A program made the position numbers and the translations under genes. A DNA stretch of 64,000 bases from Octopus sinensis (Eukaryota): positions 160,146,001 to 160,210,000 of the forward strand of contig NC_042999.1 in the NCBI RefSeq assembly GCF_006345805.1. Direction: 5' to 3'. Of the stretch, positions 1-58,325 are shown one piece after another. A model generated the notes under the pieces. It had not been told where the DNA came from. It saw nothing but the letters and a program-made list of their open reading frames with translations, and ran no database searches. How positions within the stretch are numbered: position 1 is the stretch's first letter; each line of letters opens with the position of its first letter.

Positions 1-162
1 ATTTCTTGGAACCCTATCAAATCCCTTCTCCAGATCAATGAAGCATATGTACAACTCCTTCCCATTATCTCGGTATTCCTCCTGTAATCTTCTTACAATG
101 AACACTGCATCTATTGTCCCCGTTCCTGGCATAAAAGCAAATTGCATCTCATCCACATCTCC
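1..162 (-). mobile_element. RTE-clade LINE reverse transcriptase fragment in a GPAA1 intron
   Basis: Minus strand reads DEMQFAFMPGTGTIDAVFIVRRLQEEYRDNGKELYICFIDLEKGFDRVPR, the QxGF...D..F / FIDLEKAFD RT motifs. Confidence 0.8.
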
Positions 163-416
163 TTTGGCAGGATTCAAGTAGGCACAGGTTACAAGGAAGA
201 AGCTAAGAGTTTTCTTTTTTTGTATGTTGAAGAGAGTTATTTGTACTTTCTTCTCCACTTGATTATGGTAAACATGATCACTGGAAGGCCATTTTTATTC
301 AGATGAACATCATCATCATGATCATGATAATCCTACTCATCATTGATGTGATTTTTTTTTTTTTGTCTTCTATCATAATTTGCTCAAGTATACATAAGAA
401 TGATTTAAAAGATACG

Positions 417-436
417 TCCACCTTAACACATTTCAT
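417..436 (+). promoter_or_regulatory. U12-type branch point (TCCACCTTAAC) and non-canonical AT 3' splice site
   Basis: CCTTAAC at 421-427, branch A about 10 nt upstream of CAT|G. No polypyrimidine tract with an in-frame AG. Confidence 0.75.
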
Positions 437-709
437 GCCATTTCTTTGTGGATTGGTTCTGAAAAGCCAAAAGACAAAAATGAAAAGAAGCCACAAAAAA
501 GTGATTTAAATTCTTCCAAGCTAGAAAAAGATGAAAAAGAACCTGAAACAGAGAAACAAGAGAAAGAAGTAGAGAAAGAAGACAATGAAGTGAGTCAGTC
601 AAAGAAAGAGATTTCTTGTGAGAAGAAAGAAGAAGATCCACTGGAAAAATTGTCTAAAGATGTAAATGATATTGAAGATGATGACAGTTTGAAAAACGAC
701 CCAGATGAG
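437..709 (+). CDS. GPAA1: GPAA1 internal coding exon (AISLWIG...charged loop...DPDE), phase 0 to phase 0
   Basis: AISLWIG resembles vertebrate GPAA1 ALELWMQ, which starts exon 9. Donor GAG|GTAAGT at 709/710. Acceptor is TTTCAT|GCC with CCTTAAC at 421-427 (U12 type). Frame continues into the 3562 exon. Confidence 0.8.
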
Positions 710-1225: not shown

Positions 1226-1628
1226 AGGAAACCTGGACGTTATCAAAGAAGCTTGAGAGGCGGTTGGATGGAACCTACACTCGCCTCCTTATGAGAGCTC
1301 AAAATCTCTCGTGGAAGCGTCATCCAACCAAAATGCAAATATATGGGAAACTACCACCTGTGTCATCTCTTGTGAAAGGTAGGAGAGTCCAGTTTGCTGG
1401 ACATTGTTGTAGAGCTGAAAACAAGGCAATTTCTACTCTTCTCCTCTGGAAGCCATCTACTCGTGATACCAGAGGGCACACACTCTCCTACCCTGATGTA
1501 ATCTCCAGGGATACAGGCATCCAGCAACAGAACCTCCGTTATGCCATGATGGACCGTGAAGTCTGGCGTAGCATGGTAAATTCCATTGTCTCGATCACGG
1601 TCGAACAATGATGATGATGATGATGATG
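1226..1628 (+). mobile_element. RTE LINE 3' fragment with (ATG)n tail
   Basis: ETWTLSKKLERRLDGTYTRLL...VQFAGHC...W..MV, the post-RT region of RTE ORF. Near-identical to the inverted copy at 13261-13700. Confidence 0.85.
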
Positions 1629-2183
1629 TGTGTCTTATGTCTGTGTTTGTCCTGCTTGATAACAGGTGTTGGTGTGTTTATGTCTCCCATAACTTAGCGG
1701 TTCAGTAGAAGAGACTAATAGAATAAGTACCAGGCTTATAAAAAAACAAGTACTGAGGTCAATTCATTCAACTAAAAATTCTTCAAAGTGGTGCCCCAGC
1801 ATGGCCGCAGTCTAATCACTGAAACAGATAAAAGATAAAAGATATAAAGATAGTATTTACATACAAATATATAATTTGGTTGATTTGAATATAAAAACTG
1901 AAACCAAATGTACATAGGGCCACATCTCAGAAGGTTGGCTCTTCTCTTTGGAGCCAAAAAATACTTTAGCCTCTCACAATTACTGACACTCAAAGTTAAC
2001 CCCACACTGGAGTATAATTACTGTCATATACAGGACTTTGCTATCGTTGTATGCACAAACATTTTAGACTGTATCTGGAGAAAGTGTACTTGACTGATTG
2101 GTATTAAGTCACTCCAAGACATGCTCCAACTTCTGGTCCTCCAGGATGCTCTCTTTTTTCTCCACAGTTTTTCTATTGTTAGT

Positions 2184-2518: not shown

Positions 2519-3560
2519 GTAAGTTGTTATTAAGCCCCTCCTGTGGCCTGCACTAACCACTATGCTTAGGCCTTCCAGAACTTTCTCCCTGCTCATGTCT
2601 TTGCTGCAGTATCAACTTGCAAAAGTTGATCCTTTGTTGCATCATTTACACCCATACAAATATAAAGAAGAGATAGACCTAATTCAGTACAAAAAGTTAA
2701 AAAAAAAAAAATTAACTTTTACATTTATCTAAATAATCTGTTATTAATAAATCTTTCCAAAATGTATTCAGTGAAAATTTTGAAGGTTTTTTTAAAAAAT
2801 TGCTAATATTTGTAAAACTTATCTTTCAATGTAAGTTGTTATTAAGCCCCTCCTGTGGCCTGCACTAACCACTATGCTTAGGCCTTCCAGAACTTTCTCC
2901 CTGCTCATGTCCTTGCTGCAGTATCAACTTGCAAGAGTCGATCCTTTGTGGCATCATTTACACCCACACAAATATAAAGAAGAGATAGACCTAATTCAGT
3001 ACAAAAATTAAAAAAAAAAAAAAAAAAACTTTTATAGGTGCAGGAGCGGCTGTGTGGTAAGTAGCTTGCTAACCAACCACATGGTTCCGGGTTCAGTCCC
3101 ACTGCGTGGCATCTTAGGCAAGTGTCTTCTGCTATAGCCCCGGGCTGACCAATGCCTTGTGAGTGGATTTGGTAGATGGAAACTGAAAGAAGCCTGTCGT
3201 ATATATGTATATATATATGTGTGTGTATGTGTTTGTGTGTCTGTGTTTGTCCCCCTAGCATTGCTTGACAACTGATGCTGGTGTGTTTATGTCCCCATTA
3301 CTTAGCGGTTCGGCAAAAGAGACCGATAGAATAAGTACTGGGCTTACAAAGAATAAGTCCCGGGGTCGATTTGCTCGACTAAAAGGCGGTGCTCCAGCAT
3401 GGCCGCAGTCAAATGACTGAAACAAGTAAAAGAGTAAAAGAGAGAGAGTTACATTTATCTAAATAATCTGTTATTAATAAATCTTTCCAAAATGTATTCA
3501 GTGAAAATTTTGAAGGTTTTTTTAAAAATTGCTAATATTTGTAAAACTTATTATCTTTCA
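2519..3560 (+). repeat. Tandem duplication of a ~312 bp intron segment; second copy interrupted by a family A SINE
   Basis: 2519-2830 matches 2831-3033 plus 3449-3560 directly. Confidence 0.85.
3034..3448 (+). mobile_element. tRNA-derived SINE, family A (ATAGGCGCAGGAGTGGCTGTGTGG...GGTTCAGTCCC...(TA)n(TG)n...AAGTAAAAGAG)
   Basis: A/B boxes, internal microsatellite, (TAAAAGAG)n tail; nine near full-length copies in this window. Confidence 0.9.
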
Positions 3561-3561
3561 G

Positions 3562-3761
3562 CAGGAAGATAAGTCCCGAGATTTACTGTCCATCATACCA
3601 ATGATTATCTTGAGTTTCCTTGTTGGTTTAATGACATATTACCTGCCTGATGTATTCAATAGCCATGCACGTCACTTGAAGATACCAACAGATGAGGCTA
3701 TCACATATGGACTCATGGCATTGTTCTCTGCCTGGCTTTTCTTTCCGCGATTCATTTCTAA
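3562..3761 (+). CDS. GPAA1: GPAA1 coding exon (QEDKSRDLLSIIPMIILSFLVGL...FFPRFIS), transmembrane segments; NAGNAG acceptor, so start is 3562 or 3565
   Basis: TTTCAG|CAG|GAA acceptor, AA|GTAAGT donor (phase 2). Two hydrophobic helices, matching GPAA1 exon 10 architecture. Confidence 0.85.
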
Positions 3762-4468: not shown

Positions 4469-4645
4469 AAAACCACATGAATTTGACAATGGTTTTCAAG
4501 TTGACTGGCCCCTGTTAAAATGTGTCACTCTCATCTTCCAGTCCCTTGTTCTTTTTTCAATTGCATTAATGAACATCTCTCTGGCATTTTTCCTTGCTGC
4601 TACAATCATTCCAGTTTCAGTCATTGTACAACCTGTGTCAAACAA
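4469..4645 (+). CDS. GPAA1: GPAA1 coding exon (KPHEFDNGFQVDWPLLKCVTLIFQSLVLFSIALMNISLAFFLAATIIPVSVIVQPVSN)
   Basis: Aligns by eye with human GPAA1 W..[39 protein letters not shown] acceptor and AA|GTAAGT donor, phase 2 to phase 2. Confidence 0.9.
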
Positions 4646-5269: not shown

Positions 5270-6131
5270 TTAAAATTATATGATATAAAACTTAGATAAA
5301 AACTTAGATATGTTTCGACCAAAGATTGGTCCAGGCCATGTCTAACTTAATAGCACCACCTGATAGGATTATTCGAATCCTGTTTAAGTCAAGTTTTGTT
5401 CAAGTAGTGAGTTCTTGTTGGGTGAGTTGTATCAAGTTTTGTTCAAGTAGTGAGTTCTTGTTGGGTGAGTTGTATCCAATTATGGGTGGCTTATCTGGTA
5501 TTCTTTGAAGGAATCTATCCAGACTCCGTTTAAAGTTGATGGGATCCTTTTCCTCTTTGATCTCCCTAGGGACAATGTTAAATAGGGCAGGGCCTGTTGA
5601 GGAAAAGAAATTATGTTGCAGTGTACATGTATGTTGTGATCTTGAATTGGGCAGGGGACGTATGGCCCGTGGTCCCAGTCTTGGATGAACCTTGAAGCTA
5701 AGAAAGATTTGACAGTCAAGAGGTTCTTTTCATGGTCCATATCATTTTACAGAGGTTCCTTCATTGCCTCTTGGAACTTCCATCTAAATATAGTATTTGA
5801 CTAGCAACTTTTGGGGTTGTGAGTTCATGTGTATCACTGCTGTTTTGTTCATTCACTTAGCAGTGAACTTAATTGAATGTGTCTCAATTTAACCTCGATT
5901 GTCCGTCTTTTTCTGTTGAAGTTACATGCATCAGATCAACTTCTTATCCAGAGAAAGATCAACTTCTTATCCAGAGAAAGATCAACTTCTTATCCATATG
6001 AAAGGAGAGGCCACTATATAATCCAGTTTTTGTTTCATGCAACAACACGGGAGCGGAGACACAACACCACTCATACCCAATAATTTATGAAATATTGCAC
6101 ACAAATCTCAAAACTGATTGTTTCCCATTAA

Positions 6132-6590
6132 CCCTTTAGTATTCATATTATTCTATCAAATGCAATGCTTATTGTTTCCACATTGTTTAGAATTAATTAT
6201 GCATTATCTTGTAACCTCAAGATTTCAATGATGTGACTGTTTTTAGAATGCCTATTTCTTTATTACCCACAAGGGGCTAAACACAGAGGGGACAAACAAG
6301 GACAGACATAGGTATTAAGTCGATTACATTGACCCCAGTGCGTAACTGGTACTTAATTTATCGACCCCGAAAGGATGAAAGGCAAAGTCGACCTCGGCGG
6401 AATTTGAACTCACAACGTAACGCAGACGAAATACCGCTAAGTATTTCGCCCGGCATGCTAACGTTTCTGCCAGCTCGCCGCCTGTTTTTAGAATGCCATT
6501 GTAAAGTAGGTATTAGAGGCTGAATCTGGCCAGTTTAAACCTAAAACAGAATGTTTTGGCTTGATATGGCCGGTTTTAAGGGCTAAAGGG
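6132..6590. mobile_element. piggyBac-like MITE interrupted by a family B SINE
   Basis: TTAACCCTTTAG start, GCTAAAGGG end; SINE at 6253-6481. Confidence 0.7.
6253..6481 (-). mobile_element. SINE family B with 16-bp target site duplication
   Basis: CTGTTTTTAGAATGCC at 6237-6252 and 6482-6497. Confidence 0.9.
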
Positions 6591-7295
6591 ATAATCTATA
6601 AAAAACCAAAGATTTTCTATAAATCTTGTTTCTGCTTTTTAGTGGAAGACAAATCAGCAGCATTGTCATAGGAGAGTAATGGCCTTGATAAAGCAATTAG
6701 TCAATCCCAATTACCATATTATGTGATTGAAGACTAAGATGTTTGCAGATAAGACACCCTGGAAAGAGATGCTGGCATAATGCGTGTCCTTCCTTTAGCA
6801 AAATTTAGTTATATTGCATGGAACGACAGCTGGAAACAGTGGATTTTACAACAAAGTGATTGAAATTCGATTGTAAAGATAGTGGAATTCTCACTGATAC
6901 TACAACGAAGTTGGGAATTCAGTTTTGTGATGTAGAATAAGTTATTGCATTACCACCTGAAGAATCGTCACCCCCAATCCTCAGTGAATCATCATCATCA
7001 TCATCATCATCATCATTTAACGTCCGCTTTTCAATGCTAGCATGGGTTGGACGAAATGACTGAGGTCTGGCGAACCAGACTCCAATCTGATCTGGCAGAG
7101 TTTCTACAGCTGGATGCCCTTCCTAACCAAATACGTATATTTATATTCAGATATCCATTCACTTGTGTTACATATCTTTGTGGAAGTTTAATTTAAAATT
7201 TCAAAAATTCTATACACAATGTTCCAAAATTCACCGAAGATAGAATAATATAGATTATATCACAAAATATTATTTATATGGTATATAGTATATGT

Positions 7296-7605
7296 GGCGG
7301 CGCAATGGCCCAGTGGTTAGGGCAGCGGACTCGCGGTCGTAGGATCATGGTTTCGATTCCCAGACCGGGCGTTGTGAGTGTTTATTGAGCGAAAACACCT
7401 AAAAGCTCCACGAGGCTTCGGCAGGGGGTGGTGATCCCTGCTGTACTCTTTTGCTGCAACTTTCTCTCACTCTTTCTCCTGTTGGCCTCCTTGCTTAGCC
7501 AGCAGGGTGGCGTCATTTGAAGGCTAAAACAATGCGAAGTGCATTGTGACCAGCGATGTGTAGCAACATCTGATAGCCTGGTCGGTCATGGTGATCACGG
7601 TGATA
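7296..7605 (+). mobile_element. tRNA-derived SINE, family D
   Basis: TGGCCCAGTGG A-box and GGTTTCGATTCC B-box followed by a non-tRNA body. Confidence 0.7.
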
Positions 7606-8612: not shown

Positions 8613-8714
8613 TAGGGTTATATCAGATTAAGTTTAGGTATCAAAAGATTTCACAATAACAAAGCATTTGTATTTTAATGCTCATCTTCATATTAAGTTT
8701 GTTTTAAAATCTTA

Positions 8715-9191
8715 CCGTAAATCCTCGAGTATAATCTGCATTTTTTCCCCCAAATTAAAGGTCAAAATCTCTAGTGCGTATTATACACGAGGTTAAAAAT
8801 GAAAATTATTTTCTAAGCAATGTTCGAGTCTCTATTTGCTGTCAGCAATGTTTATTCATAAGCATTTTGTGATGTCGGGCGCGAAAATACCTTAAATCAT
8901 CCATAACTTGCTGTAAGCAACATTTATTAAACGTTATTACTGTTATTTCTTTATTTTCTGCAAATGAAATGCACAAAAAAGCTACACATTTGCATTATGT
9001 TATATATACAATAATAATAAAGTGCATTACCGTGTACATTTTTACAACCAAGGACGTTATATAGACCTCCTTGACTCAAGTTAGAGAAGGGGTGCGTATT
9101 ATACACAAGGTTTAGGTTTTTCAGAGGTACAGCCCGCTAAAAATCCCCTGCGTATTATACTCAAGGGCGGACTATACTCGAGGATTTACGG
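8715..9191. mobile_element. Tc1/mariner-superfamily (pogo-type) MITE
   Basis: TA|CCGTAAATCCTCGAGTATA ... TATACTCGAGGATTTACGG|TA terminal inverted repeats with TA duplication. Confidence 0.8.
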
Positions 9192-9444
9192 TATATATAT
9201 GAGAGGATATTTGAGTGCATATATCAGATGGCAGATTTAGTAGAGTTTTCTGCAGAATACCTTCTGATTTTTGATTATGAGCATTCTTTCTGGGTTGACT
9301 TTGCGTTTGTGTTTCTGAAGTCAATAAAATAAATGCTAAAATTGATATTATCGACTGTCGTCATATTGGGACACCTGAATGGCGGTGCCCCAGCATGGCC
9401 CCACAGCTCGTGAGCTGAAACTAGATAAAATGAAAAAATATCGA

Positions 9445-9606
9445 ATAGGCGCAGGAGTGGCTGTGTGGTAAGTAGCTTGCTAACCAACCACATGGTTCCG
9501 GGTTCAGTCCCACTGCGTGGCATCTTGAGCAAGTGTCTTCTGCTATAGCCCCGGGCCAATGTGAGTGGATTTGGTAGACGGAAACTGAAAGAAGCTTGTA
9601 TATATG

Positions 9607-9643
<37 letters not shown>

Positions 9644-9838
9644 CTGTGTTTGTCCCCCTAGCATTGCTTGACAACTGATGCTGGTGTGTTTATGTCCCCG
9701 TCACTTAGCGGTTCGGCAAAAGAGATCGATAGAATAAGTACTGGGCTTACAAAGAATAAGTCCCGGGGTCGAGTTGCTCGATTAAAGGTGGTGCTCCAGC
9801 ATGGCCGCAGTCAAATGACTGAAACAAGTAAAAGAGTA
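9445..9838 (+). mobile_element. SINE family A
   Basis: Full-length copy; AAAATAT(C/T)GAAT flanking duplication. Confidence 0.9.
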
Positions 9839-9970
9839 AAATATTGAATGTAGTAAAAACATATTTATCTAATGTGCATGTCAAATGAAAAAAATTTGCA
9901 ATGATTCTCATTATTTTCCATTTACTCTGTGTTAGTAATTCACTAATTTATTTCAATTTATCTTTCACAG

Positions 9971-10268
9971 GTTGCTCCAGTGTCTGCAGTCAGTGTTATT
10001 GCTCTTGGTATCACCACCTGTCCTCATATATTTGGCTTCTGTTGTTTCAGTAATAGATGAGCAGAGACCAGATTCCGTGATTGACATAATAGTTAATGCT
10101 TGGTCTCAGCTTAAAGATACTGTATTATTAAGTATTCTAGACTATTCACTGCTCTCCTGTTGGACATATCCAGTATTTTGCTTTGCTATCTATCCAAACT
10201 GGATAATGTTGTGGGGTGTATCTCACATGAGACTTGAAAGCGACAGCACTTTATTCCGTTTCAGTTAG
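9971..10268 (+). CDS. GPAA1: GPAA1 terminal coding exon (LLQCLQSVLLLLVSPP...YPVFCFAIYPNWIMLW...FRFS*)
   Basis: TTTCACAG acceptor, phase 2. LLLLVSP and YP.W.L.W match human LLVLTSP and LYPCWLLFW at the C-terminus. Stop TAG at 10266-10268. Confidence 0.9.
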
Positions 10269-12429: not shown

Positions 12430-12840
12430 TACTCTCTCTTTTACTCTTTTACTTGTTTCAGTCATTTGACTGCGGCCATGCTGGAGAACCACCTTTAGTC
12501 GAGCAAATCGACCCCGGGACTTATTCTTTGTAAGCCCAGTACTTATTCTATCGGTCTTTTTTGCCGAACCGCTAAGTGATGGGGACGTAAACACACCAGC
12601 ATCGGTTGTCAAGCAATGCTAGGGGGACAAACACAGACACACAAACACACACACACACATATATATATATACATATATCCAACAGGCTTCTTTCAGTTTC
12701 CGTCTACCAAATCCACTCACAAGGCATTGGTCGGCCCGGGGCTATAGCAGAAGACACTTGCCCAAGATGCCAAGCAGTGGGACTGAACCCGGAACCATGT
12801 GGTTAGTTAGCAAGCTACTTACCACACAGCCACTCCTGTG
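12430..12840 (-). mobile_element. SINE family A
   Basis: Reverse complement of the family A consensus. Confidence 0.9.
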
Positions 12841-15032: not shown

Positions 15033-15346
15033 TTTATAATATATTCTATTAAAAATTATTGGTTTCAAGTTTTGGCACAAGGCCAGCAATTTTGGGGAAG
15101 AGGCAAGTCAATTAGATCAGCCCCATTGCTCAACTGGTATTTATTTTGTTGACCCTGGAAGGATAAAAGGCAAAGTCAACCTCGGTGGAATTTGAACTCA
15201 GAACACAAAGACGGATGAAATGCTGCTAAGCATTTTGCCTGGCATGCTAACGATTCTGCCAACTCACCGCTTTATCTCATTAAATGATATTGATAACATT
15301 ATAACATCTTATTCCGACTCAACTCCATGTAAAACAGAACTATACT

Positions 15347-15762
15347 ATAGGTGCAGGAGTGGCTGTGTGGTAAGTAGCTTGCTAACCAACCACATGGTTC
15401 CGGGTTCAGTCCCACTGCGTGACATCTTGGGCAAGTGTCTTCTGCTATAGCCCCGGGCCGACCAATGCCTTGTGAGTGGATTTGGTAGACGGAAACTGAA
15501 AGAAGCCTGTCGTATATATGTATATATATGTATGCGTGTGTGTGTTTGTGTGTCTGTGTTTGTCCCCCTAGCATTGCTTGACAACCGATGCTGGTGTGTT
15601 TACGTCCCCGTCACTTAGCGGTTCGGCAAAAGAGACCGATAGAATAAGTACTGGGCTTACAAAGAATAAGTCCCGGGGTCGATTTGCTCGACTAAAGGCG
15701 GTGCTCCAGCATGGCCGCAGTCAAATGACTGAAACGAGTAAAAGAGTAAAAGAGTAAAGAGT
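15347..15762 (+). mobile_element. SINE family A
   Basis: Full-length copy. Confidence 0.9.
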
Positions 15763-18093: not shown

Positions 18094-19545
18094 ATAAGCC
18101 ATAAGCAGAAGACCTACACCACAACATTTAAACATTTATTGCTGGCAAACAATGGGGAATAAATATATCCTCAAATAATTACGTTTTCTGTTTTTTTTTA
18201 GTTCAAATCTTAGAATAGTGAGTGTGAAGGATTAAAGATTTCCCAAAATGTTTCATAATAGTAAAGTGTTGAGAATCTCTGATGTAGATAATGGTGATGG
18301 AAGTGATTGCCTGCAAAATATTGTAATTTTGAGAAACATTAGAAAATCAAAGTTAACCACCCCGACTTACACCTCTTTCTGACAGGTGGGCAATAGATCA
18401 GATAAAATTTAAAACAACTTCAATCTCTCAGTACTAGTCCAATGCATTTCATGTCTAGTTTTTCTTTTTTTTTTTTTCTTTTTTTTTTAGCCGAGTTATT
18501 CATGTTTTGACTGTCATCAACCTTGACAGAATAATGGAAGTCATTTCTTACTCTTTGCCTCTTCGTCTGTCTACCTCTTGTTCTTTGTTGTTTTTTTTCT
18601 TTCTCTCAGCTATGAAAGTAGTTGGAAAAAAAAATAATGTGTCAGATAAATCAAGTAAAGTTAAAGCTGGTAAGTAAGATGTGAAGAGAAACTATGAATA
18701 TGTAGTAAAATCATTAATTAAGTTCAAAAGAAACTGAAGTAGCTTAAGGATGCAAATGTTTGGGATGGATAGGGAAGAAGGACAATCAGTTAAGAGGTCA
18801 GTAGATAAGAATATGTTATTGCTACCATGTTTTCCAAAGCCAATACTATGTTCCTCATTGACTGAGCTTTGCACTGTCAGTAGCTATCACAAACTATTGT
18901 CCTTTACAACTGTAAGCAGTGGTAGCACTGTAAAATTAACAAGTGCTTTGTTACTTTGCCTTGCTGAGTTGATATGTGATGATACCTTACGAAAGAATTT
19001 TCAGTAAAAATATAAAAAAGATACTGTAGGAGTCTAAAACACAGAATTGTTTTACATTTCGTTAGTGTTTTAAAATAATTACACTTTATAAAATGATAGG
19101 CTTATGAAAATAAAAATATTTTGAAATGCAGTCTTGTCAAATGGCAATTCCCTTCCAGCTTCCACACATCTGTATCCAATTACCATATTTCACCTCATAT
19201 TCTCCATCGTTCATGCATGCTAACATTATGCATTCATTGAAGCATGCTAGTTTCTCCAATATAAAAACGTTCCCCCACCTCTTCTAATCTCGGTAGACTT
19301 GTTGGCTGAAAGTTGTCACAGTCATGTATACAATACTTTGCTGATAATAGGAGGCACTTATGGTCAGTTGTCCTGTGGCCAATTCATTCAGCTACTTTTG
19401 GACATTGGTAAAAAATATGGAAGTAAATTTCTCCTCTGTATTCATTGCATTTCAATGTAACGAAGCACTGAGTGTCCACTGTGTTTCATGCTTGTACTTG
19501 AAATCTTCTCCCTTGTACCTTACATCTACTTTCTCTTATTATATA

Positions 19546-26771: not shown

Positions 26772-26945
26772 ATAGGCGCAGGAGTGGCTGTGTGGTAAGT
26801 AGCTTGCTAACCAACCACATGGTTCCGGGTTCAGTCCCACTGCGTGGCATCTTGGGCAAGTGTCTTCTGCTATAGCCCCGGGCCGACCAATGCCTTGTGA
26901 GTGGATTTGGTAGACGGAAACTGAAAGAAGCCTGTCGGATATATG

Positions 26946-34148: not shown

Positions 34149-34149
34149 T

Positions 34150-34185
34150 ATATAATGTATGTATGTATGCATGTATGTATGTATA

Positions 34186-34221
<36 letters not shown>

Positions 34222-34279
34222 TGTATGTATGTATGTATGTATGTATGTATGTATGTATGTGTATGCATGTATGTATGTA

Positions 34280-34315
<36 letters not shown>

Positions 34316-34345
34316 TGTATGTATGTGTATGCATGTATGTTTGTA

Positions 34346-34381
<36 letters not shown>

Positions 34382-34390
34382 TATATGTTT
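34150..34390. repeat. (ATGT)n compound microsatellite
   Basis: Seen directly. Confidence 0.95.
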
Positions 34391-35104
34391 ATGTGTGTCA
34401 TTGCGTTTGTGCTACAAACACAATGTCCCCCACCACACCGCTTAACAACCGTTGTGAGTTTGTTTACATCTCCGTATCAAGCAATTCGGTAAAAGAGACC
34501 AACCAAGAGAATAAACAGCAGACTTAAAAGTTTTTTTACTGGAGTCAATTTTGCTTGACTAAACACTCCAAGGCGGTGATGCCCTCAGCATGCTCGCATT
34601 TCCCAGTCACCGAAACAAAGTTGAGATAAAAGACAACCACTTTGACAGCTTATTTTATTTAGCGTTCAGTGAATTTGATAGCAGAAACATCCACAGTTTG
34701 AACCTACGCTAATTCTCTCCTTGAAACAATATCTAACTAAATACTATTGAAATGAGTGGGAAGGAAATGGCATTTCCAGTTTGTCACGATCCTGCAAGTT
34801 GTCCATTCACGTGATTTGAGTTAGCTCATTCACTTCTTGAAAAATATGAAAGTGAATCATATGATGATATGTAATCAGGATGTATAAAAAAAAGAAAAGA
34901 GAAAATAAAAGCAAATGAAAGAGGAAGGAAAAAGAAAGAAATAGAGAAATAAGAATTTTGAACTGAGTAGGAAAAGTTAATTTAATGAAAATATAAACAG
35001 TTGAACGTTTGAAAATATAATTTACTGTCTGCTTTGACATAAATTTGTGAACGTGTGTGTGTGTAAAAATTAATGACGAGAGAAGGAATTGTAAAAAAAT
35101 TGCT

Positions 35105-35545
<441 letters not shown>

Positions 35546-36105
35546 AACGCGCATGTGTACATGTGTGTATTCAAAATTAACTGGAGTAAAGGAAGTACGT
35601 TCCCTTGGTACTTGTACCCCGACCGATGCCCGGTGGTCCAGAAATATTCGAAAAATCTGGAACATCTGTGCAGCAGCAATCTTCTAAATTTTCATGTTCC
35701 TATTGGAACGTTGTCCAACATGTAATGAAGTTCGTTGCTAGTGTAGGCCAGGGATGGGTGACAAGGAAAAAAAAAAAAAAACCCAGCAGTTACAAAACTC
35801 TAGTTTCTTTCAAAGCAGAGAACCGCCTTCACATATAAATCACAATAACAACAGCAGTCCCTCCTGCAAATGACGTATTTTGTATTCGAGTTGAAACATT
35901 TTTTCGTTTTTTTTTTTTGGGCTGCCTTCTGTCACCATCTTGTTCGTAATTGGCTAGAAATAAGGTCGGGCAATAGTAGCGGAGAGAGCGATTACAAGTT
36001 CTTATTTCTTTGTTAATTACTTCCATATGAGTTTAAAAAACACTTCACTAATAACGTAGTTTCCTTTTAGTTGGGATAATCCGACAACTGCTTTCTGAGA
36101 ACAAG

Positions 36106-36107
<2 letters not shown>

Positions 36108-36167
<60 letters not shown>

Positions 36168-36247
36168 TGCATTAATAGTGCATTTATATGTATAAATAGT
36201 ACACTAATATGGATATTGAGTATATATGAATATATTTATGGTACATT

Positions 36248-36278
<31 letters not shown>

Positions 36279-36303
36279 ATGTATGTATGTATGTATGTAT
36301 GTA

Positions 36304-36334
<31 letters not shown>

Positions 36335-36730
36335 ATGTGTGTGTGTATGTGTGTGTGTATGTATGTATGTATGTATATATGTGTGTATGTGTGTGTATGT
36401 ATGTATGTATGTGTGTATGTGTGTGTATATGTGTATGTATGTATGTATGTATGTGTGTGTACGTATGTATGTATGCATGTATGTATGCATGTATGTATAT
36501 CTGTATGTACGCATGTATGTATGTATGTGTATATGTGTGTGTATATATGTATGTATGTTTGTATGTATGTATATATGTATGTATGTATGTGTGTATGTAT
36601 GTGTGTATCTGTGTATGTATGTATGTATGTATGTATGTGTATATGTGTGTGTATGTATGTATGTATGTATGTATGTATGTATGTATGTATGTTTGTGTGT
36701 ATGTATGTATGTATGTATGTATGTATGTAT
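36108..36730. repeat. (TG)n and mixed (TATG)/(TG) microsatellite
   Basis: Seen directly. Confidence 0.95.
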
Positions 36731-39229: not shown

Positions 39230-39800
39230 TTGGTGCTGCTGACGGTTTCTTTCACCCTAGTAATGAATCCAGAGTGCAGACCAAGCATGGCTGGAGCTCC
39301 ATCAGTGTACACACTTAACCAGCGAATCCCACGAAAGTTGGTTTTCCTGAAAGAAGTTTGATGCTTCACGAAAAATAGCTGTTGCTGTTGTCACCATAGG
39401 GTGACAGAACAAAATTTCCTCTTTTACACAGTTGCCTGACACAAAAATGAGCATATACCAGTTGCTGAGAACACGATGTCAGTCGTTTCGTCACACAGGA
39501 TGGCAAAAACAGGAGAATCTCTTACTTGGTCGAGAATCTTATCTTTGATGTCTTGATACAGGTCGTCGATCCTTCCCATGACTCTATCGTTTGATAGTGA
39601 AATCTGGGAAAGCTTGTTTGTACTATCTTTCCTCAGAACGATCTCTGCTGCACGTATTAGACAAGGTTTTATGAAAGACTCTCCGATGTTATGGCTTGTA
39701 GTGATGCTATCCAACAGCGCGCGCGCGCAACGCCCTCTCGCGCATACGCGAAGACCGGAAGAGGGAATTTGCTGATGTGGCGTTAGCTGATTAGGCGAAG
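39230..39800 (-). pseudogene. hAT Charlie/Buster-type transposase fragment
   Basis: HNIGESFIKPC...LSNDRV..RI, FAILCDETTD and VYTDGAPAMLG..SGF..RVK motifs. Confidence 0.8.
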
Positions 39801-41162
39801 TGAGCGTGAACCTTAAAAAGACAGAGAGAGATATAGCAGCAGTCAGCAGAAAGCCTTTCATTGTTGCAGACCACATTATCTTCACTCCCTACGGACGCCA
39901 TAGAAGACCAGCTCAGTTTGCTGTTGCACTTGTAAAATTCTTACAAGCGTTAAAGTTTCAGCTCTGACACATCCATACCAAGCGGAACCAAATAACACCT
40001 TATTTCGTACTGTTATAAGAACAATAAAGAATATATATTTTTACTGTTGCGCTTTGAGTTCTTTGACTGGTAGAATCTGGAAATTTAAGCAACGGAAATT
40101 GAATGCACCATTTGCACCCTAAAAGTGCAAGAAGCATCCTATTCCCGTTACAGGCTCTTCTTGCTCTTTACAAATCAACAAGGCGATCTCATAGAAAGCC
40201 TCAACAACCATTGAAGTTTGTTGCCGAAATGTCCTACTACCGTCCAACTTAGCTTGCTTCAAGGAATGTGTTTTTGTTTCAAAGAGTGCTTTGGGCTTGT
40301 CTGCAAGAGCAGGATGTGTTGTCCTCGAGTGGCGTTCCTAGCGTGAGAGTCGCATTCCATCATTGCTCAAAGTTTTGTAACATATCACACACACAGAGAG
40401 GAACCTCTGTGTCACCATTTCGAAGGGACACGAATCTAAATCGAATATATTCGTCAAGATACTTCCATTTCTTTGCGCTCATTGCGAATTATGTGACGTG
40501 CAGTGGACAACACAAACATGTGAACAAAAGATAAGGCGCGTGTAAGTTAATGCCAAGGCCCAAGTTAGAACCATTGGAGTAAAAAGTTCTGAAAACAAAA
40601 AAAAAAACTAAAACAAAAATTTGGAAAAGAAGTTAAATTAAAAGAAAAGTTATACGAAAAATTTGTAGAATAAAATATTGTATTTATTTATACGAAAATA
40701 TTTTTTAAAATTCTTTAAAAAAGAAAAGATTTTGCATAGCTTTTAGTTTTACTTAGTACTTTCTGTAATATTTAGGTCTGAATTTTAGTTTAACACTTGG
40801 ATTTATATTATAATTTTTTTCTTACAAAAAAAAATTAATTATATTTTTAACATATATATTTAATATTAAAGATTTTGCTTTTATTGTTAAAATTTTCTAT
40901 TTTTCCAATCTGTGTTTTAATTTTTTGAGACTTTATTAAATTGAGCGATAGTAGAACCTATCATATTCTTTTTGTTTTATTTGCTATTTTTAAATATATC
41001 GTACTTTTTATCATGCTAAAATATTAAAATAGTTTTCAATTTTTTAAATTAAGTTAATATTTCTTAGTATGTTACTATAATGATTTAGCATGTCTCTTGA
41101 TTTTTAAGAACCACATTATTTCATATATATGAAAACTGTGGATCAAACTTGTTTATAATCTA

Positions 41163-56171: not shown

Positions 56172-56822
56172 AAGGTGGCGAGCAGGCAGAATCGTTTGCA
56201 CGCCGGGCAAAATGCTTAGCGGCATTTCGTCCGCCGCTGCGTTCTGAGTTCAAATTCCGCCGAGGTCAACCTTATCTCTCATCCTTTCGGAGTCGATTAA
56301 ATAAGTACCAGTTACGCACTGGGGTCGATGTAATCGACTTAATCCCTTTGTCTGTCCTTGTTTGTCCCCTCTGTGTGTAGCCCCTTGTGGGCAGTAAAGA
56401 AATAACAATCGTTTGCACGCCGGGCAAAAGGCTTAGCGGCATTTCGCCCGTCTTCACGTTCTGAGTTTAAATTCCGCCGCGGTCAACCTTACCTCTCATC
56501 CTTTCGGAGTTTGATAAAATAAGTACCAGTTACGCACTGGGGTAGATGTAATCGACTTAATCCCTTTGTCTGTCCTTGTTTGTCCTCTCTGTGTTTAGCC
56601 CCTTGTGGGCAGTAAAGAAATAAGAATCTTTTGCACGCCGGGCAAAATGCTTAGCGGCATTTCACCCGTCTTTACGTTCTGAGTTCAAATTCCGCCGAGG
56701 TCAACCTTATCTCTCATCCTTTCGGAGTCGATAAAATAAGTACCAGTTGAGCACTGGTGTCGATGCAATCGACTTATTCCTCACACGATATTTCTGGCCT
56801 TGTGCCAAAATTTGAAACCAGT
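56172..56822 (+). mobile_element. Tandem trimer of SINE family B
   Basis: Units start at ~56172, ~56407 and ~56625. Confidence 0.85.
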
Positions 56823-57899: not shown

Positions 57900-58152
57900 T
57901 ATACATACATATGTATATACATGGATGCATGTGTATGTATGTATGTATGTATGTATGTATGTATGTATGTATGTATGTATGTATGTATGTATGTATGTAT
58001 ATGCATGTATGTATGTATGTATGTATGTATGTATGTATGTATGTATGTATGTATGTATGTATGTATGCATGTATGTAAATGCATGTGAGTATAGATAGGT
58101 ATATACATACATATAGTATTTATCCGCATACACACACACACATATATGTATG

Positions 58153-58186
<34 letters not shown>

Positions 58187-58260
58187 TGTATGTATGTATG
58201 TATGTATGTATGTACGTACGTATGTATGTATGTATTTATGTATGTATGTATGTATGTATG
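57900..58260. repeat. (ATGT)n microsatellites
   Basis: Seen directly. Confidence 0.95.
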
Positions 58261-58325
58261 TCAGGTCACTTTCGAGTCAGGTCGAGTCATGTGTGTGCAT
58301 GTCAGGTCACTTTCGAGTGCTACTG

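What the first reader, a model, noticed from the sequence alone, without database searches (positions are those of the whole stretch)
417..439. GPAA1 minor-class (U12) intron ending in AT instead of AG or AC
Seen: the exon homologous to vertebrate exon 9 begins GCC ATT TCT TTG TGG (AISLW) right after TTTCAT, and a U12 branch consensus CCTTAAC lies ~10 nt upstream. The nearest upstream AG (410-411) would add 25 nt and shift the frame if the previous exon ends in phase 0. Established (recalled, please verify): mammalian GPAA1 intron 8 is a minor-class intron with an AT donor and species-variable AC/AT/AA acceptors. Inference: this intron is conserved in a mollusc and carries the rare AT acceptor. 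Standard annotation pipelines would mis-model it.
Basis: partly seen in the sequence, partly recalled or inferred. Interest (0 to 1): 0.78.

Follow-up and report, generated by a model that had tools for sequence, protein, structure and literature searches.

The report
Octopus GPAA1 AT-AT minor intron
Window bases 1-436 are the end of a 2.2-kb minor-spliceosome (U12-type) intron of the Octopus sinensis GPAA1 gene that ends in AT; it is the same intron already known in vertebrate GPAA1 and NCBI's gene model already splices it correctly, so it is real but ordinary.

Summary
The window is Octopus sinensis chromosome CM016861.1, and its + strand carries the last four coding exons of GPAA1. The exon at 437-709 (AISLW...) follows TTTCAT, with CCTTAAC at 421-427.

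The upstream exon lies about 1.77 kb before the window. It ends ...GGTTTGATCAAA in phase 0 and is followed by ATATCCTTTT, a perfect U12 donor. The intron is therefore a 2,202-nt U12-type AT-AT intron.

Three Octopus genomes have identical splice sites. The intron sits at the same K|A codon boundary in other species, with varying ends:
- a bird: AT-AT
- scallop: AT-AA
- cuttlefish: U12-type GT-AG
- Argonauta: GT-AT, inferred only
- abalone: converted to a U2-type GT-AG intron

Published data give human AT-AC and mouse AT-AT.

RefSeq models of O. sinensis and O. bimaculoides already carry the GLIK|AISLW junction. Several other annotations force GT-AG sites instead and insert or delete residues; these include O. 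vulgaris, an older O. bimaculoides model and Argonauta.

AT-AT is a recognised class, about 1% of conserved animal minor introns. I saw no octopus RNA reads directly.

Verdict: a real, well-supported new instance of a known kind, of low to moderate interest.

The parts
1..436 (+). 3' part of the 2,202-nt U12-type intron of GPAA1. The intron starts about 1.77 kb upstream of the window, at CM016861.1:160144235, and ends at window 436 (160146436).
   Evidence: The window maps exactly to L002 at offset 28613. The donor ATATCCTTTT is at L002:26848.
418..427 (+). U12 branch-point sequence TCCACCTTAAC, with the core CCTTAAC at 421-427. The likely branch A is at 425 or 426, 10-11 nt from the intron end.
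   Evidence: It is identical in three Octopus species, and an equivalent motif sits at the same spacing in Argonauta, cuttlefish, scallop and a bird.
435..436 (+). Terminal intron dinucleotide AT, the non-canonical 3' splice site.
   Evidence: The junction is fixed by the RefSeq protein junction GLIK|AISLW and by the conserved Ala codon GCC at 437.
410..411 (+). Upstream AG that lies 5' of the branch site. Erroneous GT-AG gene models use it as their acceptor.
   Evidence: The O. vulgaris model (NRY-VHLNTFH-AISLW) and the UniProt O. bimaculoides model (…YIHLNTFH-AISLW) translate 412-436.
437..709 (+). GPAA1 coding exon (AISLW...DPDE), residues 404-494 of XP_029633708.1. It is phase 0 at both ends and has the donor GTAAGT.
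3562..3761 (+). Next GPAA1 exon (QEDKSRDLL...RFIS), flanked by ordinary U2-type sites (TTTCAG / GTAAGT).
4469..4645 (+). GPAA1 exon (KKPHEFDNG...PVSN), flanked by U2-type sites.
9971..10268 (+). Last GPAA1 coding exon, including the TAG stop codon.
   Evidence: The four exons joined translate exactly to the C-terminal 315 residues of XP_029633708.1 and XP_029633709.1.

Best explanation
Window 1-436 is the 3' end of an intron of Octopus sinensis GPAA1 that the minor (U12-dependent) spliceosome removes. GPAA1 encodes the Gaa1 subunit of GPI transamidase.

Shown here:
- The intron starts ATATCCTTTT directly after a phase-0 exon end.
- It carries CCTTAAC 10 nt from its end and has no pyrimidine tract.
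- It ends in AT.
- It occupies the same codon boundary (K|A) as the U12 intron of vertebrate GPAA1.

Inferred from what is established about U12 splicing:
- U11 and then U6atac pair with the donor, and U12 pairs with the branch sequence.
- The 3' splice site is chosen mainly by its short distance from the branch point. Only the A at position -2 is kept, and the last base drifts (AC, AT, AA or AG in different lineages).

This makes it an 'A-type' AT-AN minor intron, and it is probably spliced somewhat inefficiently.
For: - **Sequence features.** Searches show the window features. Searches show the donor at the exact exon end; ATATCCTTT occurs only once in the 41.9-kb locus.
- **Conservation within Octopus.** O. 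sinensis, O. vulgaris and O. bimaculoides have identical donor, branch site and AT end, although the DNA is only about 91% identical overall.
- **Protein junction.** All three O. sinensis and three O. bimaculoides RefSeq isoforms carry GLIK|AISLW. The window exons translate exactly to the RefSeq C-terminus.
- **Spacing in homologues.** Of 242 GPAA1 homologues, 206 have the spacing this junction gives (W 39 residues after HQSFFFY). Every aberrant protein among the hits comes from a genome annotation or UniProt model, none from a Logan assembly. A few short Logan or JGI fragments simply end before the junction.
- **RNA-level support in cephalopods.** Five Logan assemblies from different sequencing runs of a decapodiform cephalopod carry an uninterrupted CDS with ...ATTAAA|GCCATAGCC.
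- **Orthologous loci.** The bird is AT-AT (83 nt), scallop AT-AA and cuttlefish GTATCCTTTT...CTCCTTGAC...AG. All have the branch A 9-10 nt from the 3' end.
- **Literature.** GPAA1 is AT-AC in human and AT-AT in mouse (PMC1557818). GPAA1 is treated as a U12 gene in PMC8848931 and PMC6800510. The donor and branch site define U12 introns, non-canonical ends are functional, and the optimal branch-to-3'ss distance is 11-13 nt (PMC3584512). The AT-AN class is described in PMC8280824.
Against: - No octopus RNA reads or cDNA were seen here. The RefSeq proteins are computed models, and their transcript support could not be inspected.
- The branch sequence is TCCACCTTAAC rather than the full TTCCTTAAC.
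- Depending on how it is counted, the branch-to-3'ss distance (10-11 nt) sits at the short edge of the published 11-13 nt optimum.
- Dependence on the U12 spliceosome is inferred from motifs and was not measured.
Confidence: 0.9

Rival explanations
1. The real intron is an ordinary U2-type GT-AG intron that uses AG 410-411 as acceptor. Its donor would be a GT either inside the upstream exon (CG|GTATATC) or 29 nt into the intron (AA|GTGACT), as in the O. vulgaris and UniProt O. bimaculoides gene models.
For: Both combinations keep the reading frame, and published annotations chose them. Cryptic U2 sites are known to be activated around minor introns (PMC8280824).
Against: - These models delete 21 conserved membrane-helix residues (ISIGLYMPPFSLMTAAGLIK) or insert 18 residues. 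Neither change is found in 206 of 242 homologues.
- AG 410-411 is preceded by a purine-rich stretch (GATTTAAAAG) with no pyrimidine tract, and it lies upstream of the conserved U12 branch site.
- The inserted peptides are simply the U12 donor and branch site read as codons (ATA TCC TTT = ISF; CAC CTT AAC = HLN).
Confidence: 0.04
2. The intron has AT-AT ends but is removed by the major (U2-dependent) spliceosome, as the rare U2-type AT-AC introns are.
For: U2-dependent AT-AC introns exist (PMC1557818 abstract; 85 major AT-AC-like introns are mentioned in PMC8280824).
Against: - The donor matches the U12 consensus at 9 of 9 positions.
- The branch motif sits 10 nt from the 3' end and there is no pyrimidine tract. 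These are the features that define U12 introns.
- The orthologous vertebrate intron is an accepted U12 intron.
Confidence: 0.03
3. The AT end is an assembly or sequencing error, or an allele private to this assembly, and the true end is AC or AG.
For: None found. This was considered only because a single-base error would create the pattern.
Against: TCCACCTTAACACATTTCAT|GCC is identical in the independent assemblies of O. sinensis, O. vulgaris and O. bimaculoides. Argonauta also ends in AT.
Confidence: 0.01

Closest known systems
The U12-type intron of vertebrate GPAA1 (human AT-AC, mouse AT-AT; Sheth et al. 2006, PMC1557818)
   Same: - Same gene and same codon boundary: K|A before the (A)L-LW motif, phase 0.
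- Same ATATCCTT donor.
- A TCCTTRAC-type branch site about 10 nt from the 3' end. This was shown here in the bird Chaetura pelagica, which is also AT-AT, and by alignment to human GPAA1.
   Different: - Length: 2.2 kb in octopus, with a LINE fragment inside, against 83 nt in the bird and 176 nt in mouse.
- The branch site carries CCACC instead of TTCC in front of TTAAC.
- Human and mouse genomic sequences were not inspected here, so their termini rest on the literature.
Non-canonical 'A-type' AT-AN minor introns (AT-AA, AT-AT, AT-AG)
   Same: The donor and branch site are canonical for U12 and only the last base differs. AT-AT makes up 0.95% of conserved animal minor introns and is the second commonest non-canonical type (PMC10639083). 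The AT-AN class is recognised, and in human cells it depends on CENATAC (PMC8280824).
   Different: Nothing in kind. The efficiency of splicing and any CENATAC dependence in octopus are unknown.
Orthologous intron in other molluscs
   Same: The position and phase are the same in cuttlefish, Argonauta, scallop and abalone.
   Different: - Cuttlefish: a canonical U12 GT-AG intron.
- Argonauta: appears to be GT-AT.
- Scallop: AT-AA.
- Abalone (Haliotis asinina): has lost all U12 signals (GTGGGT...TTCTAG) and is now U2-type.
- The octocoral Dendronephthya: has no intron at this site.

Membership tests
U12-type (minor-spliceosome) intron | A 5' splice site matching (A/G)TATCCTT at the first intron base | tested here: met
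   AAA|ATATCCTTTT at L002:26848, outside the window on the same chromosome.
U12-type (minor-spliceosome) intron | A branch-point sequence TCCTTRAY close to the 3' splice site (published optimum 11-13 nt) | tested here: met
   CCTTAAC at 421-427, with A426 10 nt from the last intron base. It matches 7 of 8 positions of TCCTTAAC. The published optimum comes from PMC3584512.
U12-type (minor-spliceosome) intron | No polypyrimidine tract ahead of the 3' splice site | tested here: met
   Positions 390-420 read AAGAATGATTTAAAAGATACGTCCA, which is purine-rich. Only 9 nt separate the branch motif from the intron end.
U12-type (minor-spliceosome) intron | Terminal dinucleotides AT-AC or GT-AG (canonical subtypes) | tested here: not met
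   The ends are AT-AT. This places the intron in the recognised non-canonical AT-AN subclass and does not exclude it from the U12 class, because the class is defined by the donor and branch site.
U12-type (minor-spliceosome) intron | Excision at these exact sites in RNA | tested here: inconclusive
   The support is indirect only:
- RefSeq model junctions
- conserved protein spacing
- intron-free transcript assemblies from a decapodiform cephalopod

No octopus reads were available.
U12-type (minor-spliceosome) intron | Dependence on the U11, U12, U4atac and U6atac snRNPs | not testable with these tools
   This needs knock-down or in vitro splicing. O. sinensis is listed among the species used in a comparison of minor-intron conservation (PMC10639083).
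Orthologue of the vertebrate GPAA1 U12 intron | The same position and phase in an orthologous gene | tested here: met
   Gene identity: Pfam Gaa1 and PDB 7w72. Position: the K|A boundary in phase 0 is shared by octopus, bird, scallop, cuttlefish and abalone.

The most novel reading that the evidence does not exclude
Within cephalopods one orthologous U12 intron shows three terminal states: GT-AG in cuttlefish, GT-AT in Argonauta and AT-AT in Octopus. Outside the group it is AT-AA in scallop, AT-AC or AT-AT in vertebrates and U2-type in abalone. The branch-to-3' end distance stays at 9-10 nt throughout.

If RNA data confirm the inferred Argonauta GT-AT junction, this would be a natural stepwise record of a switch between the G-type and A-type minor-intron subtypes through a non-canonical intermediate, with the 3' end free to change independently of the 5' end. 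That could be used to test how the minor spliceosome picks its 3' site.
Probability: 0.5. Interest if true: 0.35.

Novelty: new member of a known kind. Interest (0 to 1): 0.22.

Why it matters
The finding adds a well-supported invertebrate instance of a known minor intron. It shows that the GPAA1 U12 intron dates back at least to the common ancestor of molluscs and vertebrates.

There is also a practical point. Of the roughly 66 GPAA1 protein models among the hits that come from a genome annotation or UniProt entry, 17 are aberrant at or next to this junction, mostly by inserted or deleted residues. At least 8 of them carry the tell-tale K-I-S-F/L read-through of ATATCCTT. The junction is therefore a convenient check on whether an annotation pipeline or splice aligner handles non-canonical minor introns.

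It does not change what is understood about minor splicing.

Tried and rejected
- **Donor search in the window.** I looked for a U12 donor inside the window. The only RTATCCT matches on the + strand, at 18165 and 30665, lie downstream of the acceptor and so cannot serve this intron. The true donor lies outside the window.
- **Human GPAA1 from memory.** It was later replaced by database sequences.
- **First homologue search.** Using only the poorly conserved C-terminal part, it returned one protein. The tool appears to cap hit length at about 1.75 times the query length, which is my inference, so I repeated the search with longer queries.
- **Locus look-ups.** Look-ups for P0122 and P0126 found nothing on record. 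Using the longest isoforms solved this.
- **Octocoral.** The Dendronephthya locus has no intron at the site, so it says nothing about the ancestral state.
- **RNA scans.** Rfam and tRNA scans of the window found nothing.
- **Long ORFs.** Six of the seven ORFs of 150 aa or more lie in the microsatellite tracts at 35.1-36.8 kb and are artefacts. The seventh, at 39424-39885 on the - strand, was not examined.
- **Failed Pfam call.** One Pfam call on repeat fragments failed because of a stop codon and was not repeated.
- **Supplement search.** The supplement held for PMC10639083 has no per-gene table, so I could not confirm that this very intron is in that survey.

Full report
**What is in the sequence**

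Positions 410-445 read AGATACGTCCACCTTAACACATTTCAT|GCCATTTCT.
- AG is at 410-411, CCTTAAC at 421-427 and AT at 435-436.
- An open frame starts at GCC (437). It encodes AISLWIGSEKPKD... and runs to 709, where a standard donor GTAAGT follows.

**Which gene and which genome**

It placed further GPAA1-like exons at about 3.6, 4.5 and 10 kb on the + strand, and I refined them by eye.

Database searches then returned Octopus sinensis GPAA1 isoforms XP_029633708-10, which are 100% identical to the window exons. The O. sinensis locus (L002, GCA_006345805.1, CM016861.1:160117388-160159268) contains the window exactly, with window position x equal to L002 position x+28613. The window therefore starts at CM016861.1:160146001.

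Joined, the exons 437-709, 3562-3761, 4469-4645 and 9971-10268 translate exactly to the last 315 residues of the RefSeq proteins.

Gene identity is supported by:
- Pfam Gaa1: 2e-35 for the window part and 2e-158 for the whole protein
- human GPAA1 in PDB 7w72: 1e-110

**The missing half of the intron**

The upstream exon is not in the window. In L002 it ends at 26847 with ...GCT GGT TTG ATC AAA, in phase 0. The intron begins ATATCCTTTTCACC at 26848.

That 9-mer, ATATCCTTT, occurs only once in the 41.9-kb locus. The intron is 2,202 nt long (CM016861.1:160144235-160146436), and its last 436 nt are window 1-436.

The intron therefore has:
- a perfect U12 donor
- a CCTTAAC branch motif whose second A is 10 nt from the end
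- no pyrimidine tract, since 390-420 is purine-rich
- AT-AT termini

The other three introns of the gene in the window have ordinary GTAAGT...YAG sites.

CCTTAAC occurs only 3 times on the + strand of the window. By my rough estimate, the joint chance of both motifs at the required places is about 1e-8 to 1e-9.

**Is the junction really 436|437?**

- All three O. sinensis and all three O. bimaculoides RefSeq isoforms read ...AAGLIK|AISLWIG....
- Human GPAA1 aligns there as ...LGLK|ALELWMQ.
- Among 242 GPAA1 homologues collected, 206 have the tryptophan exactly 39 residues after the H of HQSFFFY, which is the spacing this junction gives. Every aberrant protein among the hits is a genome-annotation or UniProt model, not a Logan assembly. 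A few short Logan or JGI fragments merely end before the junction.
- Five Logan assemblies from different runs (SRR27666058, SRR24189504, SRR27666077, SRR27666069, SRR24189505) hold a complete, uninterrupted 725-codon CDS of a decapodiform cephalopod on 2.3-2.5 kb contigs. They read ...GGATTGATTAAA|GCCATAGCCATGTGG. I take these to be mRNA-derived, so the K|A junction exists in cephalopod RNA.
- Sliding the junction by one base would replace the conserved Ala codon, so the boundary is not ambiguous. This follows directly from the sequence.
- I could not inspect octopus reads themselves.

**Comparison across species**

| Species | Intron start | Intron end | Intron length | Type |
|---|---|---|---|---|
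| O. sinensis, O. vulgaris, O. bimaculoides | AAA\|ATATCCTTTTCACC | TCCACCTTAACACATTTCAT\|GCC | 2202, 2217, 1868 nt | U12, AT-AT |
| Argonauta hians | AAA\|GTATCCTTTT | TTCTTCCTTAATGATTTTTAT\|GCC | 1544 nt | U12, GT-AT (inferred from homology) |
| Acanthosepion pharaonis (cuttlefish) | AAA\|GTATCCTTTT | TCTCCTTGACAACATTAG\|GCA | 921 nt | U12, canonical GT-AG |
| Pecten maximus (scallop) | AAA\|ATATCCTTTT | GTTCCTGACTGAGCTTAA\|GCC | 1902 nt | U12, AT-AA |
| Haliotis asinina (abalone) | AAG\|GTGGGTGTGA | CACAATTCTAG\|GCC | 1238 nt | U2-type, no U12 signals |
| Chaetura pelagica (bird) | AAG\|ATATCCTTTT | TTTCCTTGACCCTCCCCAT\|GCC | 83 nt | U12, AT-AT |

The octocoral Dendronephthya has no intron at the site.

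In every U12 case the branch A is 9-10 nt from the intron end, and the penultimate base is A while the last base varies.

Sheth et al. 2006 list GPAA1 as AT-AC in human and AT-AT in mouse (PMC1557818, Table 3). GPAA1 is used as a U12 test gene in PMC8848931, where the mouse intron is 176 nt, and in PMC6800510.

The intron is thus an old bilaterian U12 intron whose 3' terminal base drifts. The octopus AT end is one of several states, and it is also found in mouse and in a bird.

**How it most likely works**

The published definition of U12 introns rests on the donor and the branch sequence, not on the terminal dinucleotides. Non-canonical ends support U12 splicing experimentally, often with reduced efficiency, and the optimal branch-to-3' site distance is 11-13 nt (PMC3584512).

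AT-AN introns are treated as one 'A-type' class. In human cells this class has higher basal retention and depends on CENATAC (PMC8280824).

I therefore infer the following steps:
1. U11/U12 recognises ATATCCTTT and CCTTAAC.
2. The 3' site is chosen by distance from the branch point.
3. The AG at 410-411, which lies upstream of the branch site, is ignored.

These steps are inferred. The motifs, their spacing and their conservation are shown.

**Annotation behaviour**

RefSeq got it right in two Octopus species. Other models force GT-AG sites:
- **UniProt A0A0L8HK50 (O. bimaculoides).** It inserts ISFSPPFIQK-YIHLNTFH. It reads 29 nt past the donor to a GT and enters at the AG equivalent to window 410-411, adding 54 nt in all.
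- **O. vulgaris model.** It uses a GT inside the upstream exon plus the same AG, and so replaces ISIGLYMPPFSLMTAAGLIK with VHLNTFH.
- **Argonauta model.** It adds IFFFLNDFY through an AG 27 nt upstream.

Of the hits, about 66 are models from a genome annotation or UniProt entry, and 17 of them are aberrant at or next to this junction. At least 8 of the 17 continue K-I-S-F/L, which is ATATCCTT read as codons: Lottia, Pomacea, Nucella, Candidula, Mya, Mizuhopecten, Chaetura and O. bimaculoides. The Capitella model, and a tick model, continue K-V-S (GTATCC).

**Novelty and scoring**

AT-AT is the second commonest non-canonical minor-intron type in animals. It accounts for 701 of the conserved animal minor introns (0.95%); GT-AT accounts for 0.43% (PMC10639083). 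That survey lists O. sinensis among the species in its minor-intron conservation comparison. I could not check whether this particular intron is in its tables.

The finding is therefore real and well supported, but it is a new instance of a known kind and is already modelled correctly in RefSeq.

The most novel reading not excluded is the cephalopod series GT-AG / GT-AT / AT-AT as a natural record of a subtype switch. That reading depends on RNA confirmation of the Argonauta junction.

Noticed in passing
L001:8697-9568 (O. bimaculoides, GCA_001194135.2 CM046603.1): A run of N sits where the exon homologous to window 3562-3761 should be, and tblastn finds no copy of that exon in the locus. This probably explains why RefSeq splits O. 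bimaculoides GPAA1 into a 504-aa model, which reads through the donor after DPDE, and a separate 182-aa model.
   Followed up: partly
window 3556-3564: A tandem NAGNAG acceptor, TTTCAGCAG|GAA. O. sinensis models include the Gln (DPDEQEDK), whereas the O. vulgaris model lacks it (DPDEEDK). This is possibly alternative 3' site use.
   Followed up: no
window 1-~180 (- strand), continuing upstream in L002 to about 27600: A degenerate antisense LINE-type reverse-transcriptase fragment (…FMPGTGTIDAVFIVRRLQEEYRDNGKELY.CFIDLEKGFDRVPRN…YTDDIVLM…) lies inside the U12 intron. Window 1-156 has no blastn match in the O. bimaculoides locus.
   Followed up: partly
window 1627-1842, 3017-3442, 9433-9841, 12436-12840, 15338-15756 and others: An interspersed repeat of about 150-430 nt occurs many times in both orientations in the GPAA1 introns and downstream, in both O. 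sinensis and O. bimaculoides. It is SINE-like, but ARAGORN and Rfam found no tRNA or known RNA family.
   Followed up: no
window 34149-36730 and 57932-58261: Long microsatellite tracts (ATGT, TA, TATC, TATG, TGTA) create spurious ORFs of 150-200 aa in several frames. A 218-nt tandem repeat (2.7 copies) lies at 56190-56780.
   Followed up: no
L005 (Chaetura pelagica KN126932.1) 5928-7415: The bird assembly contains a duplicated block of GPAA1 exons and several N runs (1,100 N in all). The RefSeq protein P0217 repeats about 110 residues and reads through the U12 donor (ILK-ISFWGQGG).
   Followed up: partly
L007 (Haliotis asinina) 8659-9896: At the same codon boundary the abalone intron has GTGGGT...TTCTAG and no U12 motifs. 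This is an apparent U12-to-U2 conversion within molluscs.
   Followed up: partly
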